Translations under genes and position numbers: made by a program
DNA from: Mizuhopecten yessoensis
Lineage: Eukaryota
DNA length: 64,000 nucleotides
Assembly: GCF_002113885.1 (NCBI RefSeq)
Contig: NW_018408547.1
Span: 205,165-269,164, forward strand
Reading direction: 5' to 3'
Shown: positions 22,031 to 42,008 of the stretch, piece by piece
Numbering within the stretch: the first letter of the stretch is position 1
Layout: the number at the start of each line of letters is the position of its first letter
The notes under the pieces: generated by a model
The model's input: the letters and a program-made list of their open reading frames with translations, nothing else
The model's database searches: none
What the model was told of the DNA's origin: nothing

Positions 22031-22260
22031 AAAACAGTTTACGATTCATTTATACGGAATGTTAACATGACATCCACTTACCGCAAACAATTCACGATTC
22101 ATTTATACGGAATGTTAAAATGACATCCACTTACCGCAAACAATTCACGATTCATTGATAGGTAATGTTAAAATGACATCCACTTACCGCAAACAATTCA
22201 TGATTCATTGATACGTAATGTTAAAATGACATCCACTTTTAATACCGCAAACAATTCAGT
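22031..22260. repeat. 53-bp tandem repeat, about 4 copies
   Basis: AAACAATTCACGATTCATTTATACGGAATGTTAAAATGACATCCACTTACCGC. Confidence 0.95.
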
Positions 22261-22781
22261 TCAAATATTAAGGTTTTTACACAAATACATTGGTGCACAC
22301 ATAAGAATGAAATGGTATCATATGGCGAGATTTCTTGTGTGTATCCAATGAGGGCATATTCCTTGTTACAGAAATGAAATGGTTTACGCAACCAATATAC
22401 ACCTGTTATTTTTTTGTTCATTGCATAAATAGTGACGTAATTACTAAGACAATAAACATGATGTCCAAGTCGTGGACATTAATATATATGAAGTAAAAAT
22501 GGTAATAATAAAAAATTGATGAAAGTTCCATAAAGAAATTCTTGTTATGTGATCAGAATAAACTTTAACTTCATTTCAATTTATCACAAGATTTACAAAT
22601 CTTCTCCAAGGTTGTATCTGGGCAGATCCTTTTCTAAATAAGAAATGGAAACTTATTCAGAACTGTATGTGTTACAGCCAATATAAATACAATATAAGTC
22701 AGATAAAAAAAATATCTTTTTCCATCCATCATATCAAAAAATAGTCAGCTGACAGTGGATATATATATCTATACTTGTGTA

Positions 22782-22963
22782 ATAAAAAATGATTAAATGT
22801 CCATGTGAAGTAAGTAAATAAAGAAAAAATAAGAACTAACAATCGACTAAAAGGCTAGCTGCTTTCACCCTTCACAGGGCTCTTCAGGTTTTAAGTAACA
22901 GAGAGTAAGCATAATAAACCTGAAGAGCCCTGTGATTGGGTGAAAGCAGCTGGTTTTTAAGTC
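22782..22963. mobile_element. Penelope-like mini-insertion with two inverted hammerhead motifs and a 15-bp TSD
   Basis: ATCTATACTTGTGTA at 22767-22781 and 22964-22978; CTGAAGAGCCC-loop-GGGTGAAAGCAGCT on both strands. Confidence 0.75.
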
Positions 22964-23349
22964 ATCTATACTTGTGTATATATTAAAAACATTACAGAGT
23001 GTATATATAATAGAAAAAGGAATGTCTGTGTACAAACATATCTTGTTTACTCTTAATTTCAATTCTTTATAATTTTTTATATATCTATATTCAGTCTATA
23101 CAGATCTGTTAAGAAAAAAATATAATATACTTATACTGAGTAAGCTCACAGTAGCTAAATTAATAGTTATTATAATTTTTCTTCTGTAGGTATTAATAAT
23201 ATAGGATACCAGCTTACAATCTTTCAAATAAGACTTATTTTTTACATTCATATACCAAATTGGTATCATCAAAATATTTATCAGAAACATGGACCGAACA
23301 CTGAAGTCAATAAGAAAATCAACATCCCAAAGTCAAAACATCTGAGAAT

Positions 23350-24430
23350 AGAACTGGACAGAAATCAAGCAAGTCAACATACAGTAATCAACAGGAAGTA
23401 ACCACACAAATCAACAGAAAGTAACCACAAAAGTCAAAAGGAAATTATCAGACAAGTCAACAGGAAGTAATCATATAAGTCAACAGGAAGTACCACACAA
23501 GTCAACAAGAAGTAACCATACAAGTCAACAAGAAGTAACCACACAAGTCAACAGGAAGGTATCATACAAGTCAACAGGAAGTAACCATACAAGTCAACAG
23601 GAAGTAATCATACAAGTCAACAGGAAGTTATCATACAAGTAAACAGGAAGTAACCACACAAGTCAGCAGGAAGTAACCCCACAAGTCATTAGGAAGTAAC
23701 CACACAAGTCAACAGGAAGTAACCACACAAATCAACAGGAGGTAACACCACAAGTCAACAGGAAGTAACCACACAAGTCAACAGGAAGTAACAACACAAG
23801 TCAACAGGAAGTAACCACACAAGTCAACAGGAAGTAACAACACAAGTCAACAGGAAGTAACCACACAATTAGTCAACAGCAAGTAACAATACAAGTCAAC
23901 AGGAAATTATCACACAAGTCAACAGGAAGTAACCACAAAAGTCAACATGAAGTATTCATTCAAGTCAACAGATAGTAACCACACAAGCCAACAGTAAGTA
24001 ACAACACTAGTCACCAGGTAGTTATCATACAAGTCAACAGGAAGTAACAACACAAGTCAACAGGTAGTTATCATACAAGTCAACAGTAAGTAACAACACT
24101 AGTCACCAGGTAGTTATCATACAAGTCAACAGGTAGTTATCATACAAGTCAACAGGAAGTAACAACACAAGTCAACAGGTAGTTATCATACAAGTCAACA
24201 GGAAGTAACAACACTAGTCACCAGGTAGTTATCATACAAGTCAACAGGTAGTTATCATACAAGTCAACAGGAAGTAACAACACAAGTCAACAGGTAGTTA
24301 TCATACAAGTCAACAGGTAGTAACCAAACAAGTCAACAGTAAGTAACAACACAAGTCAACAGGTAGTTATCATACAAGTCAACAGGAAGTAACTACAACA
24401 ACCCACAGGAAGTAACAACACAAACAGGAA
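23350..24430. repeat. 23-bp minisatellite, about 45 copies
   Basis: AAGTCAACAGGAAGTAACCACAC, with variant AAGTCAACAGGTAGTTATCATAC. Confidence 0.97.
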
Positions 24431-25038
24431 CTAAGGTGATATGACAAAAGAAGCACATCCTGCACCTCACAACAATGAAGAGGAAATACACATTTACTGT
24501 TACATTATATTGCTGTAGTAAAATGATGCACCAACCAATCCAATATTTGAACACATACATGTTTTAAATAAAACAAAACATTTATATATACATATAAAAT
24601 GTGGAAATTTAACATTGGAATATCAGGTTTATTAAGTGTTTGGTCCACAACAAAAAAAGCACCTGTGTTGCCCCCAGATTGCTCAACCTTATCTTAACTT
24701 AAGAAACTCCAAATTAATTTGGCAAAATTTTGCCCCCATTCTCAAATAGATTTATACTTTTTTTCTTGAATGTGATACAGGAAATATTCAAAAATCTGAA
24801 ATCTATAACTTATTTTTGTATATTTTGTTTCTAGTAGAGATTGTATTTCCATAACTACTAGTAGTATCAAGAAAAAATAACAAATAAAAATTTGTGTATT
24901 TGATATAAAAACTAAATTTCAAAGATACATAAAGTGTAAACTGAAAACCAGGCACACTTGTATCATTTTTAAATTGAGTAGCAGGTGCAACAATACATTT
25001 AACACATAACAAGTTTCACATGTATTCATCACATAACC

Positions 25039-25667
25039 TTACATCAACCGCCCTATGAGAGTACCGAACGAAATAAATATGATACACATGAACAGTTCCT
25101 CTTTATAACAAAGTTCTGAAAGCTTTAAATCTTTTGATTTGGCAAATTTATAGAGTAGATATAATGGAATAAAAACATGTAACAGATCGGGAATCATGAG
25201 TCCGATATTCCTGGCATTCTGGAAATGAGATCCTTTGCCGTAAACCACATGTTGTATAAACTGGTCGGAACCTTCCACCGATATGTGCATTAGGTTGATG
25301 CTAACTATTGCTAGTATCTTCCAGGATACTATTTCATTACGATTATCGCATAAATTCAACACGAGGCACGTAGCGATGACTTCTGTGATGGTGAACAGCA
25401 TATGATGTTTGTAGTAATCGTAAAAGTCCTCGTTGTAGTAACTGAAGTACGACCACCAGGAGTAATAGTGGGGATACAGGTTCGCAACATACAAAGCGAA
25501 CATAGCAGGTCGCAGATTTCTCCGACGAATCAGTGGAATGAGGTACTTAATGCTTTCATACGCCAGGAGGACGAAGATCACGGTGAACAGCCAAATCCGC
25601 ATTGTTTGCCAGGTGGCGTTGAAGTATACATGTTTGTAAGTTGTTGGCCCTTGATCCTCATATTGAC
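25039..25667 (-). CDS. Uncharacterised multi-pass membrane protein, last coding exon
   Basis: (G)QYEDQGPTTYKHVYFNATWQTMRIWLFTVIF...GRLM*; tttag acceptor, phase 1. Confidence 0.88.
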
Positions 25668-25741
25668 CTAAAAATTACATATAAATAAAATAAAAAAAGA
25701 TATAAACGATGGAGCCTCAACATCTGGATTCCGTAGTTTTA

Positions 25742-25794
25742 TTACCGGTTTACATGTTTCGGCTAGCTAGGCTTGCCATCATCAGAACCAATAA
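25742..25794 (-). ncRNA. Minimal type I hammerhead ribozyme in a Penelope-like pLTR remnant
   Basis: UUAUUGGUU-CUGAUGA-U-GGC...GCC-GAAA-CAUGUA-AACCGGUAA; AAUAAA follows directly. Confidence 0.8.
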
Positions 25795-26338
25795 AAGTGA
25801 GAGTTTTATTGAGAAAAATATCAATAAAACATTTTCGTTTTAAATGTATTAAACATTACTTTCTTCGGAGGATTGTTTGTTAATTAAAATGCCTTGTTCG
25901 TGTATAAATTAATCTGGCACATTTGCTGTGAGTTAAATTCTGACAGGTTTTGAAATTAGATTTGCATATCAGTAATGTAAGTATGTAATCATAAATAATA
26001 CCAGTTCCTATTTTATAATTTATTTATATTTAAAACGTTTTGCGAAGTGTTTTTGTAACTAGGAGATGAACCAAATAAAAGAGCAACCAGGTGCAGCATA
26101 CCCCCCCCCCCCCATAAAAAAAACTACATTCAGGATTTCTACTGACCCATCATGGATTTGTGTTTGAGCAGAAAACTGTACAATCAGTTTTACAATAATT
26201 TTATGTGGACATGCTACCTATTCTCTGTATACAAAATGCAGACTTTGTACAATCATCAATATAACTAGGAACACTAAAGACTTGTGGAGTATATATATAT
26301 AGGACTATGTATAGAATAAAAACATTTTTTTCAGATCG

Positions 26339-26379
26339 TCCGCTAGGCCTTTCTGCCTTCTAGGGCTTCTTCAGGCGGA
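26339..26379 (-). ncRNA. Minimal type I hammerhead motif inside a TSD-flanked insert
   Basis: UCCGC-CUGAAGA-A-GCC-CUAGAA-GGC-A-GAAA-GGCCUA-GCGGA; 21-bp direct repeat at 26296-26316 and 26390-26410. Confidence 0.72.
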
Positions 26380-26419
26380 TTCATAGGACTATATAGGACT
26401 ATGTATAGAAGGGCTACTT

Positions 26420-26990
26420 TTAAACCAAGTATGAAGTTTGTATGTCCATACATTTTAAGTTATCATTATCATTCAGAGAAGCAAAATTATCTATTTGGCA
26501 ATGGTAACCTTGAACTTTGACTGACTGCCCCTTAAACCAATAGGCTTAGTCACAATCAATAGGGAACCCAAAACCGGAAGTTTGAACTTTGTATAGTAAT
26601 ACATTCTTATGTTATTATTGGCACATTTTCAACTTTGTATATCAAGTAATCTTCTGGACAAGCCCTACCCAGCAGAATTCTATTTTTAGCAACAGTGACC
26701 CTGAACTCTGGGGCCCCAAGCCCAAAATCTGCAGGGTTCTTTGCATCCTCTTGGGCTACCACAAACCAAGTTTGAGGTTTGTGTGATCAAACATTCTCAA
26801 GTTATTATCTGGACAAGCCCTACCAAGCAGAATACTACTTTTAGCAACAGTGACCTTGACTTCTCCGACACCATGCCCAAAATGGATCGGGTTCTTTGTA
26901 TCCACTAGGGCAAACCAAACACCAAGTTTGATCTTTGTATGATCAATCATTCTCAAGTTATTATCCAGACAAATACTATGGACAGATGGA
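26420..26990. mobile_element. HINE-type satellite element, degraded
   Basis: Repeated AGCAACAGTGACC(T/C)TGA...CCAAGTTTGA...TTCTCAAGTTATTATC units. Confidence 0.65.
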
Positions 26991-27449
26991 TTTAGATCTT
27001 CTCAATGGAACCTTATTGTAATACAATAAACTTTCATTTGTGTTAGTTGAGATTAGAAAGTTTCTAGAGGCATGAAGATTTCCAAAAATGGTACTAGTGT
27101 ATTTGGCTTTAACATCCTGACAACGAAGCTAAATCACGTTTGAGACATATCTATATTTGAATATCTTAAGAAGTTTGATAAAAAAATATTTTTAGAAATG
27201 AATTTAGAGACGATTTTTTAAAAATTATATTGCCTTTGCCTTTGTAGCTTAATTTGTGACATATATTTATAGTAACCATGGTCATAACCCTGACACATTA
27301 ACTGAATTTAACTCCTCATTCTTATACTTGTGGAACTAATCACTTTCATCAGCATAAGTTTATTGTTCTGGTGTGGAGTTGTCCCCCTTTGACCAATAAC
27401 AACATTTACAATTTTTTGTGCACTGAAAACATTGCAAAAATTTTAATGT

Positions 27450-27895
27450 AACACGTGTGCATTGTGTAAAACTCACCTCTGAATACAGTATCGAAGCACG
27501 AACAAACGTGTGTATTGTGTAAAACCCACCTCTGAATACAGTATTGAAGCACGAACAAACGTGTGTATTGTGTAAAACTCACCTCTGAATACAGTATCGA
27601 AGCACGAACAAATGTGTGTATTATGTAAAACTCACCTCTGAATACAGTATCGAAGCACGAACAAACGTGTATTGTGTAAAACTCACCTCTGAATACAGTA
27701 TCGAAGAACGAACAAACGTGTATTGTGTAAAACTCACCTCTGAATACAGTACGAAGCACGAACAAGCGTGTGTATTTTGTAAAACTCACCTCTGAATACA
27801 GTATCGAAGCACGAACAAATGTGTGTATTGTGTAAAACTCACCTCTGAATACAGTATCGAAGCATGAACAAGCGTGTGTATTGTGTAAAACTCAC
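27450..27895 (-). repeat. 51-53 bp tandem array derived from an exon 3' end plus donor
   Basis: Eight extra copies of TTGTTCGTGCTTCGATACTGTATTCAGAG-GTGAGTTTTACACAATACACAC. Confidence 0.95.
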
Positions 27896-27985
27896 CTCTG
27901 AATACAGTATCGAAGCACGAACAAGTACACTTGTTCCTGTCCACCTTCCCTTTTCCTGGCACCCAGATTTTTAGATGGATTATAC
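27896..27985 (-). CDS. Uncharacterised membrane protein, coding exon 2
   Basis: (G)IIHLKIWVPGKGKVDRNKCTCSCFDTVFR; ttcag acceptor, gtgagt donor; 90 nt, phase 1-1. Confidence 0.85.
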
Positions 27986-28610
27986 CTGAAAAACATTTGT
28001 TATAGAAATTGTAATAAATATTTCTTTTGGCATGACGAGAAAAGATTGTATACCCTTAACTCAAACTGTTACATATTATAATACAACTTTGCCCTTTCTA
28101 CAGAACACTTTATCATGCCATGAAATAGCCGACACTTCATAGGGTGACCATGATAGAGAATGGGCAACAAGATATATATAGGAAAGTATATTCAGCATTA
28201 GTCTGAATAGCAGGTTAAATACTCCAGTTTACCAATACTTCTCTTAGAGGCCTTTTAAAGGGTATGCAAAAGTAGACTAAATATAATCAGTCCAAAGGTG
28301 ACTTTTCCATGTAAATGGTAAAATATTAATATATAAACAAACTAGCAAGGAAGGTTTTCTAGCACTTTCATCGTATCTTCGTATTGTAACTGATACCCGA
28401 CCAGTATCATCATTCTTCTAACCCGATGCCCAGGATTAGTAGATTTAAAAAAAGGTTTTTGAAGATTTTCAAATATTTACTTTGAAAATATAGCTCCAGT
28501 TAACAGAATTTTGCAAACTCTGCCTACCAACAGTGAGACTCGCACTCGAAAAATGAAATGTTACAACAGAGAAGTGACCGTGTAAGCAAATAGACATTCG
28601 TTCTAGCTGT

Positions 28611-29350: not shown

Positions 29351-29402
29351 CCTTACTTTGATTAAGTAAACAGTAGAACAGGTTAATGAAATGGTGAATT
29401 AC

Positions 29403-29580
29403 CTATGTGGATGTATGGAAGGATCGTTACGAAGATGACACCACTGAGGAAGGCGAGGACCTTGTCCTTGTAGGTGGTGACTGATGAGGAACTGGAGTTG
29501 TGGAGTGTCGTCAACCGCTTCTCCATATAACTCTGCATCATGTTACTACCAGGGGCTGACCCAGACTTGTTGAAAAACAT
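29403..29580 (-). CDS. Uncharacterised membrane protein, coding exon 1
   Basis: MFFNKSGSAPGSNMMQSY...KVLAFLSGVIFVTILPYIHI; tacag acceptor 14 nt upstream of the ATG; gtaatt donor. Confidence 0.82.
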
Positions 29581-40090: not shown

Positions 40091-42008
40091 ATGAATCACC
40101 AGTCTGATTTCGTGGGCAGTGTACAGAACAACTCATCTGCTACACAAGACGAGAATGTTCAAGCCAATGCCATGGACATGACACAATCTTACACAAATGG
40201 TTTGCAAAGAGAAAACAGTCAGTATGATATCATGAACAGTATACATCCTAACACTGTGGGCTCACAGGAGGAAAATGTTCAATACGACCCCATTAACCAA
40301 ACGTGTTCCGAATCAGCTGATACAAACGAAAAGGGCGATCAATGCGGTACGGTTGACAGTAAGCCGTCTCACTCAGCTTGTTCGCACGAGAATGGCAACA
40401 CCAATCCAACCGACAATAAGTTGTTCTCCACAGTTGGTCCACAGCAAATGAATAGTCAATCGGATGTTTTTTACAATACTAATTCAGGCAGAATCGATAA
40501 AGGACAAGGACAACGCAGTCCCTTCGGCTCAGCTGATGCACAAGGAGAGGGTGACGATTCTGATATCACCAACAGCAAGCAGCATGATTTAGCTAGCTCA
40601 CAGGACGAAAATGGCCAAACCGATCTATTGGATTACAAGCAATCCCGCAAACCTAACATGCAAGAGCAGAATGGCGAATCTGATATCTCGAATAGAAAGC
40701 AGGCGAACACAGATAATTCACAGGACCAGAACAGCTATTCTGATATCATGAACAATAAAACGTCCAACGCAGTCGGTTCACAAGTAAATAACAAACTGGA
40801 TATTTTAGACAACAAGCATTCGAAGCCATCCGATGCTCAAGAAGTCAGCCGAAGATTGTCTATGGGTAGTGATCTGTCAGACGAGAATGGTGAAGCCAAT
40901 GCCGTGGACATGACACAATCTTACACAAATGGTTTGCGAAGAGAAAACAGTCAGTATGATATCATGAACAGTAGACATCCTAACACTGTGGGCTCACAGG
41001 AGGGAAATGTTCAATACGACCCCATTAACCAAACGTGTTCCGAATCAGCTGATACAAACGAAAAGGGCGATCAATGCGGTACGATTGACAGTAAGCCGTC
41101 TCACTCAGCTTGTTCGCACGAGAATGGCAACACCAATCCAACCGACAATAAGTTGTTCTCCACAGTTGGTCAACAGCGAATGAATAGTCAATCGGATGTT
41201 TTTGACAATACTAATTCAGGCAGAACCGATAAAGGACGAGGACAACGCAGTCCCTTCGGCTCAACTGATGCACAAGGAGAGGGTGACGATTCTGATATCA
41301 CCAACAGCAAGCAGCATGATTTAGCTAGCTCACATGACGAAAAAGAGCAGAATGGCCAATCTGATATCACAGATAGAAAGCAGGCGAACACAGATAATTT
41401 ACAGGACCAAAACAGCTATGCTGAATGCACGAACAACAAAACGTCCAACGCAGTCGGTTCACAAGTAAATAACAAACTGGAAATTTTAGACAACAAGCAT
41501 TCGAAGCCATCCGATGCTCAAGAAGTCAGCCGAAGATTTTCTATGGGCAGTGATCTGTCAGACGCAGCTGATAAACAAGAGAGAAAATACAGTCCCAGTG
41601 TCGCTAACCAGTGCGACTCGGCTCATACAGCAGTAAGCACACAAAAAGAGAATGACCAATCCGATCTTTTGGATAACAACCAATCCTGTACAGCTAACTC
41701 ACTAGAGGAAAATGACGAAAGTAACATAACTAACAGTACGCTGCTTTATGTAGCTGGCTCACAAGACGAGAACGACCAATCAGATGTTTTTGATAATAAC
41801 CAATCCTGTGCAACTAACAACGGCCAGGAGGAGAATGACAGAAGTAGCATAACTAACAGTAAGCTGCTCAATGGTGCTGGCTCGGAGGAAGAGAATGACA
41901 AATCTGATCTTTTAGCCAACAAGCAACTGTGCACTGCTTACGCCCAGGACCCCCATATTGTTAATCAAGAGACTGCAATACATCAACCAGGAGAAAGTGA
42001 AAGACCAT
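40091..42008 (+). CDS. N/D/S/Q-rich repeat protein, first coding exon
   Basis: In-frame upstream stop at 40070; 639 codons of ~22-aa quasi-repeats; T-gtaagt donor. Likely 5'UTR exons at 39847-39912 and ending at 36381. Confidence 0.8.

What the first reader, a model, noticed from the sequence alone, without database searches (positions are those of the whole stretch)
22767..26410. Cluster of three distinct hammerhead-bearing mini-insertions in and just downstream of one gene
Seen: within 3.6 kb there are three unrelated minimal hammerhead families (helix III ACAUGU, AGGCCU, AGCAGCU). Each has a copy on the minus strand, which is sense to the membrane-protein gene; two are in its last intron. 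Two have long TSD-like direct repeats (15 and 21 bp) that begin in a (TA)n run. Established: Penelope-like elements and retrozymes carry such minimal type I hammerheads, which cleave best as dimers. Inference: a TA-microsatellite-targeted family of tiny ribozyme retroelements, with possible effects on host pre-mRNA.
Basis: partly seen in the sequence, partly recalled or inferred. Interest (0 to 1): 0.78.

Follow-up and report, generated by a model that had tools for sequence, protein, structure and literature searches.

The report
Truncated Penelope-element tails carrying hammerheads
The three small hammerhead-ribozyme motifs are real, but they are the broken-off tail ends of three ordinary Penelope-like retrotransposon families that litter this scallop genome and insert at TA-rich sites, and the host gene splices normally around them.

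Summary
Three minimal type I hammerhead (HHR) motifs lie on the minus strand at 22887-22856, 25785-25751 and 26374-26344. They are sense to a three-exon membrane-protein gene, and two sit in its last intron. The 15-bp and 21-bp direct repeats next to (TA)n runs are exact.

These are not a class of tiny ribozyme retroelements.
- **AGGCCU family (445 copies):** it is the 3' end of a ~3.6-kb element encoding reverse transcriptase plus a C-terminal GIY-YIG endonuclease.
- **AGCAGCU family (609 copies):** its HHR lies about 124 nt downstream of a related GIY-YIG ORF at 16 or more loci. The window copy is a head-to-head double insertion.
- **ACAUGU family (51 copies, old):** I could not link it to an ORF.

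HHRs in pseudo-LTRs, (TA)n targeting, 5' truncation, inverted copies and 30-40-nt "tails" are all published features of Penelope-like elements.

One extra point: short AGGCCU copies share a fixed 5' end, and 33 carry a non-templated G there. This suggests copying from a capped RNA 5' end back from an internal priming site.

RNA-seq shows the last intron spliced normally. About six such triple clusters are expected genome-wide by chance. This scan has noted the same kind of element many times elsewhere in this genome. Ordinary.

The parts
22767..22781 (.). Left copy of the 15-bp target-site duplication ATCTATACTTGTGTA; it follows a TATATATA run
22782..22963 (.). Family 1 (helix III AGCAGCU): head-to-head double insertion of two PLE 3' ends. 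The left arm carries the full 3' tail. The right arm stops 11 nt after the cleavage-site position.
   Evidence: The centre differs in every genomic copy, so each is an independent foldback. RNA folds as a -69.2 kcal/mol hairpin.
22856..22887 (-). Family 1 HHR core, minus arm: CUGAAGA ... GAAA GCAGCU A. Helix I is weakened by two mismatches relative to the family consensus.
22920..22952 (+). Family 1 HHR-like core, plus arm, with G at position 17 (consensus A); predicted non-cleavable
22964..22978 (.). Right copy of the 15-bp target-site duplication
25695..25790 (-). Family 2 (helix III ACAUGU): a ~95-nt fragment of an old, low-copy HHR-bearing repeat. Its 3' end lies 24 nt upstream of the last-exon splice acceptor.
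25751..25785 (-). Family 2 HHR core: CUGAUGA-U-GGCAAGC...GCUAGCC-GAAA-CAUGU-A. [quoted passage not shown]
   Evidence: PMC4209133
26296..26316 (.). Left copy of the 21-bp direct repeat; its TTCTATA part (as TATAGAA on the + strand) doubles as microhomology with the element RNA
26317..26389 (-). Family 3 (helix III AGGCCU): a 73-bp mini copy of a young EN+ PLE. It runs from the fixed 5' end G-AATCCGCC to the proximal 3' end ...GTTTTTA(TTCTATA).
26344..26374 (-). Family 3 HHR core: CUGAAGA-A-GCC...GGC-A-GAAA-GGCCU-A
26390..26410 (.). Right copy of the 21-bp direct repeat
25039..25671 (-). Last coding exon (210 aa plus stop) of the host gene, a conserved uncharacterised protein with about six hydrophobic segments
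25672..27893 (-). Last intron of the host gene; it contains the family 2 and family 3 insertions and is removed in RNA-seq
   Evidence: joint 25665->27894, GT..AG on the minus strand, 22 reads in two runs plus one contig
27894..27986 (-). Exon 2 of the host gene
29401..29580 (-). Exon 1 (start codon at 29580) of the host gene

Best explanation
All three motifs are passenger hammerheads. They sit inside short insertion products of three different Penelope-like element (PLE) families of a pectinid scallop genome. [quoted passage not shown] The endonuclease cuts TA-rich DNA with a stagger of about 14-21 bp, and both cut ends can prime reverse transcription on element RNA.

- **Family 1.** Both ends primed, giving two 5'-truncated cDNAs joined head-to-head. 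This makes a foldback with one long-tailed and one short arm, flanked by a 15-bp duplication.
- **Family 3, and probably family 2 (inference).** Reverse transcription started at an internal site about 70 nt downstream of the RNA's 5' end, inside the pseudo-LTR, and ran off the capped 5' end. The result is a 73-95-bp mini copy that is little more than the HHR.

The HHRs serve the element, not the host. As lone monomers of three incompatible helix III types they are expected to be essentially inert in the host pre-mRNA.
For: **Shown:**
- Long family 3 copies continue upstream into an ORF end that hits Pfam GIY-YIG (23.5 bits, cutoff 22.6).
- A full copy (L091) has a 752-aa ORF with RVT_1 and GIY-YIG hits. 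It also has a DKG motif and a CKKPRCGTC (CX4CX2C) linker, an upstream 279-aa ORF, and HHRs 3,585 bp apart in both pseudo-LTRs (C5388:105872 and 109457).
- The family 1 HHR lies about 124 nt downstream of, and on the same strand as, a GIY-YIG ORF that is 58% identical to the family 3 one. This holds at 16 or more loci (coordinates; L029).
- Copy numbers are 445, 609 and 51, with zero hits in reversed-pattern controls.
- Copies abut (TA)n almost without exception.
- Family 1 copies have a different centre at every locus, so each is an independent foldback. One arm typically carries an extra ~38-nt tail.
- Family 3 has two alternative 3' ends 37 nt apart.

**Fixed 5' end:**
- 33 copies start G-AATCCGCC, while 0 of 73 copies that extend upstream have G there; all 73 have C (Fisher p=3e-9).
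- TCAATCC fits the initiator consensus YYANWYY, with +1 at the inferred first A (sequence plus established knowledge).

**Literature:**
- Min-HHRs in PLE pseudo-LTRs have a bulged base 5' of helix II, a 4-5-bp helix I and a small palindromic helix III. A single motif showed no detectable cleavage (PMC4209133).
- (TA)n targets, heavy 5' truncation, adjacent inverted copies and 30-40-bp tails at one end are described (PMC8557442).
- A PLE protein cuts and extends both DNA strands, prefers AT-rich DNA and starts reverse transcription at internal RNA sites (PMC11167929).

**Host gene:** the last intron is spliced in two RNA-seq runs and one contig set.
Against: - Family 2 could not be tied to any RT/EN ORF. 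29 copies share only about 60-80 nt upstream and about 230 nt downstream of the HHR start, and tblastn found nothing.
- The RVT_1 hit (26.4 bits) is below Pfam's cutoff of 29.6, and one GIY-YIG hit (21.7 bits) is just below 22.6.
- The capped-5'-end reading rests on the terminal G and an initiator-like motif. I have no 5' end mapping of the RNA.
- In family 2 the analogous extra G (5 of 13 short copies vs 0 of 6 long) is not significant (p=0.13).
- No cleavage assay exists for these exact ribozymes.
- Intron read depth was about 0, so RNA-seq could not have shown a cleavage product.
Confidence: 0.88

Rival explanations
1. The short copies form their own lineage of tiny non-autonomous, SINE-like or retrozyme-like HHR retroelements. 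They are mobilised in trans by PLE proteins and amplify from short master copies, not as by-products of full-length PLE RNA.
For: - Family 2 has no detectable ORF link. Its copies share only a ~310-nt unit, with a CRE-like ACGTCA motif upstream of the HHR.
- Related HHR units form tandem arrays elsewhere: a 63-nt period at C2617:2391278-2393485 and a 144-nt period at C2575:142066-143441.
- Short family 3 copies have a discrete 5' end.
- A 2026 preprint argues that animal retrozymes derive from PLE pseudo-LTRs (10.64898/2026.07.22.740005).
Against: - For families 1 and 3 the short copies are 97-100% or 80-93% identical to the 3' ends of ORF-bearing copies, and intermediate lengths exist.
- The short copies lack the upstream promoter-like region, so they could not easily act as master copies.
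- The terminal G is never inherited by longer copies.
Confidence: 0.1
2. The sense-strand intronic hammerheads are functional in the host. They cleave the pre-mRNA co-transcriptionally and tune expression or splicing of the membrane-protein gene.
For: - Two intact cores lie sense to the gene in its last intron. One cleavage site is only about 80 nt upstream of the acceptor.
Against: - Monomeric min-HHRs showed no detectable self-cleavage in vitro (PMC4209133).
- The three helix III sequences cannot pair with each other to form the active dimer.
- The intron is spliced at the expected sites, and no read ends pile up.
- The insertions are generic members of 51-609-copy families, with no sign of local selection.
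- Sense orientation in 2-3 cases carries no statistical weight.
Confidence: 0.03
3. The 182-bp family 1 element is a MITE-type DNA transposon: terminal inverted repeats plus a target-site duplication, with HHR-like strings present by chance.
For: Near-perfect inverted repeat, a 15-bp direct repeat, high copy number, and weak matches to miRNA hairpin models.
Against: - The two arms are each the 3' end of a PLE whose longer copies run into a GIY-YIG ORF.
- The centre of the palindrome differs at each locus and the arm lengths differ. That is not expected for a transposed unit.
- The outer ends, not the inner ones, are the conserved termini abutting (TA)n.
Confidence: 0.02

Closest known systems
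Canonical EN+ Penelope-like elements with a CX2-5CxxC linker (Neptune/Nematis type; Arkhipova 2006, Craig et al. 2021 PMC8557442)
   Same: [quoted passage not shown] Also pseudo-LTRs, an HHR near the 3' end, (TA)n target preference, heavy 5' truncation, adjacent inverted copies and a 30-40-nt tail at one end.
   Different: These are scallop families whose sequences I could not match to a named Repbase entry. Family 3 also has an upstream 279-aa ORF with no Pfam hit. I did not do clade assignment by phylogeny.
Minimal hammerhead ribozymes of metazoan PLEs (Cervera and de la Pena 2014, PMC4209133; Lunse et al. 2017, own knowledge)
   Same: Type I topology, CUGANGA...GAAA core, a bulged nucleotide at the 5' end of helix II, a 4-6-bp helix I and a short palindromic helix III that can only be completed in a dimer.
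   Different: Family 3 has an extra unpaired A on both sides of a 3-bp helix II. The family 1 helix III is a 7-mer with a central A-A. Activity was not tested here.
Internal initiation and both-strand priming in the Anolis PLE PAc (Frangieh et al. 2024, PMC11167929)
   Same: Two alternative 3' ends (the tail signature), an AT-rich target, and head-to-head products consistent with extension of both cut strands.
   Different: My reading is in vivo genomic inference only. The mini copies ending at a capped 5' end with a non-templated G are my inference and are not described in the parts of that paper I read.
Animal non-LTR retrozymes (Cervera and de la Pena 2020, PMC7229834; Li et al. 2026 preprint)
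   Same: Small non-coding HHR-bearing repeats related to PLE pseudo-LTRs. Family-2-like units do form tandem arrays elsewhere in this genome.
   Different: The window copies are solitary or inverted, not direct tandem repeats. No HHR pair can excise a unit, and I have no evidence of a circular RNA.
Conserved intronic hammerheads of amniotes (HH9, HH10; Rfam RF02275, RF02277)
   Same: A sense-strand HHR inside an intron of a protein-coding gene, of retroelement origin.
   Different: Those have a stable helix III and cleave as monomers. Here the only Rfam signal was 15 bits against a 52-bit threshold, and conservation is not shown.

Membership tests
EN+ Penelope-like element (families 1 and 3) | Reverse transcriptase domain with the PLE-type N-terminal DKG motif | tested here: met
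   Family 3 full copy L091: RVT_1 E=6.9e-6 but 26.4 bits, below the 29.6 cutoff. The ADKGG motif is present in the translation. Not tested for family 1 beyond open frames of 800-980 aa.
EN+ Penelope-like element (families 1 and 3) | C-terminal GIY-YIG endonuclease in the same ORF | tested here: met
   PF01541 at 23.5 bits (cutoff 22.6) for L039 and 21.7 bits for L091. A family 1-linked homologue is 58% identical.
EN+ Penelope-like element (families 1 and 3) | Pseudo-LTRs carrying a hammerhead motif near the 3' end | tested here: met
   In family 3 the HHR is ~160 nt after the stop codon and ~100 nt before the 3' end, and it is present at both ends of one full copy, 3,585 bp apart. The family 1 HHR is ~124 nt after the EN ORF at 16 or more loci.
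EN+ Penelope-like element (families 1 and 3) | Insertion signature: 5' truncation, adjacent inverted 5'-truncated copy, 30-40-nt tail at one end, AT-rich or (TA)n target | tested here: met
   compared with PMC8557442 and PMC11167929
EN+ Penelope-like element (family 2, ACAUGU) | Physical link of the HHR-bearing repeat to an RT/EN ORF | tested here: not met
   No tblastn hit within 1.5 kb of 29 copies. Shared sequence is limited to about -80..+230 around the HHR start. Inverted head-to-head pairs do occur, so PLE-type mobilisation is still likely.
Hammerhead ribozyme, type I minimal (min-HHR) | Conserved core CUGANGA...GAAA, H at position 17, helices I and II formed, short palindromic helix III | tested here: met
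   Met for 25785-25751 and 26374-26344. Partly met for 22887-22856, where helix I has only 3 of 6 pairs. Not met for 22920-22952, which has G17.
Hammerhead ribozyme, type I minimal (min-HHR) | Self-cleavage activity | not testable with these tools
   RNA-seq depth in the intron was about 0. The literature reports no detectable cleavage by single min-HHRs (PMC4209133).
Rfam hammerhead families (RF00163, RF00008, RF02275-7) | Score at or above the family's gathering threshold | tested here: not met
   This fits the design of those models, which require a stable helix III.
Non-LTR retrozyme | Two or more HHR units in direct tandem, so that self-cleavage releases a unit able to circularise | tested here: not met
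   The window has one sense HHR per family, and the family 1 pair is inverted. Tandem arrays of family-2-like units exist only elsewhere in the genome.

The most novel reading that the evidence does not exclude
The mini insertions may be a discrete, reproducible product of PLE retrotransposition. On this reading, reverse transcription starts at the internal initiation site of the 5' pseudo-LTR and runs off the capped 5' end of the element RNA, about 7 nt upstream of the hammerhead, adding a cap-derived G. This would map the PLE transcription start in vivo, place the hammerhead at the extreme 5' end of the RNA, and offer a simple route from PLE pseudo-LTRs to free-living HHR minielements and retrozymes such as family 2.
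Probability: 0.35. Interest if true: 0.45.

Novelty: new member of a known kind. Interest (0 to 1): 0.22.

Why it matters
As it stands, this is routine repeat annotation. It shows that hammerhead motifs in scallop introns are Penelope-like element debris and should not be read as host ribozymes.

The only part with wider value is the fixed 5' end with a non-templated G. If confirmed, it gives a genome-derived map of the PLE transcription start. It would also give in vivo support for the internal-initiation mechanism seen in vitro in 2024, and a plausible origin for animal retrozyme-like minielements.

Tried and rejected
- **Rfam scans** do not detect these minimal motifs. The best signals were spurious miRNA-hairpin matches to the family 1 foldback.
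- **Unbiased background sample.** I used whole-genome pattern counts with reversed-pattern controls instead.
- **Linking family 2 to a PLE ORF.** tblastn and all-against-all blastn of 29 loci found nothing.
- **RNA-seq** had no power to show ribozyme cleavage, because intron depth was about 0. Reads over the family 1 and family 3 segments come from other genomic copies; their loose ends match other loci and the long-form element.
- **MITE reading of family 1** was rejected (variable centres, PLE arms).
- **Chance** was rejected (0 hits in 40 simulations; 0 hits in reversed-pattern controls).
- **The terminal G as a subfamily SNP** was considered and rejected. Long copies of the same subfamilies (L091, L056, L059) have C there.
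- **Spliced model.** I searched only the last exon by reference and mapped a homologue back onto the window. I did not build or search a joined spliced model.
Full report
**What is in the sequence**

Reading 22500-26700 and running a structure-aware scan of the whole window gives exactly three sites. The scan required CUGANGA, a helix II of at least 3 bp, GAAA, a palindromic ANNNN(N)U helix III and H at position 17. All three sites are on the minus strand:
- 22887-22856, helix III AGCAGCU.
- 25785-25751, helix III ACAUGU.
- 26374-26344, helix III AGGCCU.

Forty simulated windows of the same dinucleotide make-up, scanned with the stricter criteria that find two of the three sites, gave none. 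The plus-strand partner of the first site (22920-22952) has G at position 17 and is not a valid hammerhead.

Rfam finds nothing at gathering score. In E-value mode it finds only a 15-bit HH9 match plus miRNA-hairpin artefacts on the first element. That is expected, because the curated models need a stable helix III.

The direct repeats are exact: 15 nt at 22767-22781 / 22964-22978 and 21 nt at 26296-26316 / 26390-26410. Both begin in TA runs.

**The host gene**

The ORF at 25039-25671 on the minus strand has no Pfam family. It is 89% identical to an uncharacterised 298-aa protein of Pecten maximus and is conserved across molluscs and other invertebrates. The genome is therefore a pectinid scallop. 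Its size and contig count (988 Mb, 82,659 contigs) recall the published Mizuhopecten yessoensis assembly, but that is from memory only.

Mapping the Pecten protein back onto the window gives three coding exons with proper splice sites: 29580-29401, 27986-27894 and 25671-25039. The homologue has about six hydrophobic segments.

So the second and third motifs are in the last intron and sense to the gene. The first is 2.1 kb downstream of the stop codon, well past the only AATAAA/ATTAAA signal, which is at 24633. I searched only the last exon by reference and did not build a joined spliced model.

**Family 3 (AGGCCU)**

The 73-bp insert has hundreds of relatives at 97-100% identity. The 36-nt core occurs 445 times with up to 2 mismatches, and 0 times in the reversed-pattern control.

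In sense orientation the longer copies continue upstream through a region with three TGACGTCA motifs into the end of an ORF. That ORF end hits Pfam GIY-YIG.

A full copy (L091) has these features:
- A 752-aa ORF with RVT_1 and GIY-YIG hits.
- An ADKGG motif and a CKKPRCGTC linker between RT and EN.
- A 279-aa upstream ORF without a Pfam hit.
- The HHR about 160 nt after the stop codon and about 100 nt before the 3' end, which abuts (TA)n.
- The same HHR again 3,585 bp upstream, that is, in both pseudo-LTRs.

This is a canonical EN+ Penelope-like element. The CX2-5CxxC linker is the feature described for the Neptune and Nematis clades (PMC8557442).

**Family 1 (AGCAGCU)**

The 182-bp element has many relatives, and its HHR core occurs 609 times.

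In every copy the two arms are inverted 3' ends of the same element. The centre differs from locus to locus. One arm usually carries an extra ~38-nt tail, and the outer ends abut (TA)n.

At 16 or more loci the HHR lies about 124 nt downstream of, and on the same strand as, a GIY-YIG ORF that is 58% identical to the family 3 one, often inside open frames of 800-980 aa. This comes from comparing coordinates, and from L029.

The window copy is thus one independent head-to-head double insertion with a clean 15-bp duplication. Its minus arm has two helix I mismatches relative to the consensus, and its plus arm has G17. As RNA the whole element folds into a -69.2 kcal/mol hairpin (z = -10.5) that buries both cores.

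**Family 2 (ACAUGU)**

This family is old (78-92% identity) and rare, with 51 core matches.

Copies share only about 60-80 nt upstream and about 230 nt downstream of the HHR start, and no RT or EN could be found within 1.5 kb. Several copies form head-to-head pairs.

Related units form tandem arrays with a 63-nt period (C2617) and a 144-nt period (C2575).

I therefore cannot say whether the window copy (25695-25790) is a truncated PLE tail or a piece of a short non-autonomous derivative. Its core matches the published min-HHR architecture, including the bulged base 5' of helix II (PMC4209133). Its 3' end lies 24 nt from the splice acceptor.

**How the insertions were made**

The published picture fits point by point:
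- PLE insertions are heavily 5'-truncated.
- They often have an adjacent inverted 5'-truncated copy.
- They carry a 30-40-bp tail at one end.
- They prefer (TA)n, and they carry the HHR near the 3' end (PMC8557442).
- A purified PLE protein cuts and extends both DNA strands, prefers AT-rich DNA and starts reverse transcription at internal RNA sites, which explains the tail (PMC11167929).

Here, family 3 has two alternative 3' ends 37 nt apart (...TTCTATA or ...TATCTAC). The window copy uses the proximal one. Its TTCTATA is shared between the target and the element, so 7 of the 21 repeat bases are microhomology.

**One observation that goes slightly beyond the literature I read**

Short family 3 copies do not end at random 5' positions. 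Of 177 exact 27-mers, 73 extend upstream and all have C before AATCCGCC. Another 33, including the window copy, have G there, and none of those extends upstream (Fisher p=3e-9). Long copies of the same subfamilies have C.

A terminal non-templated G is what reverse transcription of a cap produces in other retroelements (own knowledge, known from L1). In addition, TCAATCC fits the initiator consensus with +1 at that A.

My inference is that the mini copies run from the capped RNA 5' end, about 7 nt upstream of the HHR, to the internal initiation site in the 5' pseudo-LTR.

In family 2 a similar extra G (GGTTCTGATGA versus TGTTCTGATGA) occurs in 5 of 13 short copies and 0 of 6 long copies. The window copy has it. 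The difference is not significant (p=0.13).

**Is the cluster special, and does it affect the host?**

A generic min-HHR pattern gives 15,290 matches against 5,926 in the reversed control. Adding family 1, that is about 10,000 real motifs, or 1 per 100 kb. About 6 clusters of three within 3.5 kb are then expected genome-wide under uniform scatter. Shared (TA)n targets add more: 2 of 87 other loci have a second family inserted within 200 bp.

RNA-seq shows the last intron removed at the expected GT..AG. Twenty-two junction reads in two runs and one contig support this, with no pile-up of read ends. Intron depth was about 0, so cleavage could not have been seen.

Single min-HHRs did not detectably cleave in vitro (PMC4209133), and the three helix III sequences cannot pair with one another. 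I conclude that the motifs are inert passengers.

Reads over the family 1 and family 3 segments carry loose ends that match other copies. So these PLE families are transcribed elsewhere in the genome.

**Relation to earlier notes of this scan**

A word search returned 23 notes on hammerhead or Penelope motifs elsewhere in this genome. Several follow-ups reached the same "real but ordinary" conclusion. These notes did not change my reading. I reached it, before consulting them.

**Verdict**

The finding is a set of new members of a known kind, and interest is low. The only thread worth following is the capped-5'-end mini-copy signature.

Noticed in passing
window 27453-27924: A 53-bp x 9 tandem array (93% matches) starts in the end of exon 2 and repeats the last ~12 codons plus the GTGAGT donor, giving a string of potential decoy 5' splice sites at the start of the last intron. 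RNA-seq uses the exon-proximal donor.
   Followed up: partly
window 23388-24423: A 23-bp x 45 minisatellite (TCAACAGGAAGTAACCACACAAG) lies downstream of the stop codon. Low RNA-seq depth in one run runs through it, so it may lie in a long 3' UTR isoform.
   Followed up: no
window 22032-22238: A second 53-bp x 3.9 tandem array with a different consensus from the intronic one.
   Followed up: no
L054:1380-1520 (G000:C3601 near 40760-40830): Two inverted family 3 PLE fragments are joined through CCCTAACCCTAACCC / TTAGGG-type telomeric repeats at an internal site.
   Followed up: no
G000:C2617:2391278-2393485; G000:C2575:142066-143441; G000:C3088:125378-125731: Tandem arrays of family-2-like hammerhead units (63-nt period with a U3 core variant, a 144-nt period, and an 82/245-nt spacing). 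These are retrozyme-like arrangements.
   Followed up: partly
G000:C42:386842-389178: A 42-bp satellite whose unit matches the generic CUGAUGA...GAAA pattern (CTGATGATTGTCTCACTGAAATGTGTC). It inflates generic HHR counts. I did not check whether it is a true HHR array.
   Followed up: no
L091:24-863: The family 3 PLE has a 279-aa ORF immediately upstream of, and abutting, the RT-EN ORF, with no Pfam hit. Another note of this scan (s1-572314) describes an extra conserved gene in a scallop PLE clade. I did not compare the two.
   Followed up: no
window 25672-25720: The 3' end of the old family 2 fragment lies 24 nt from the acceptor AG, so the branch-point region of the last intron probably lies within or at the edge of the inserted sequence.
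   Followed up: no
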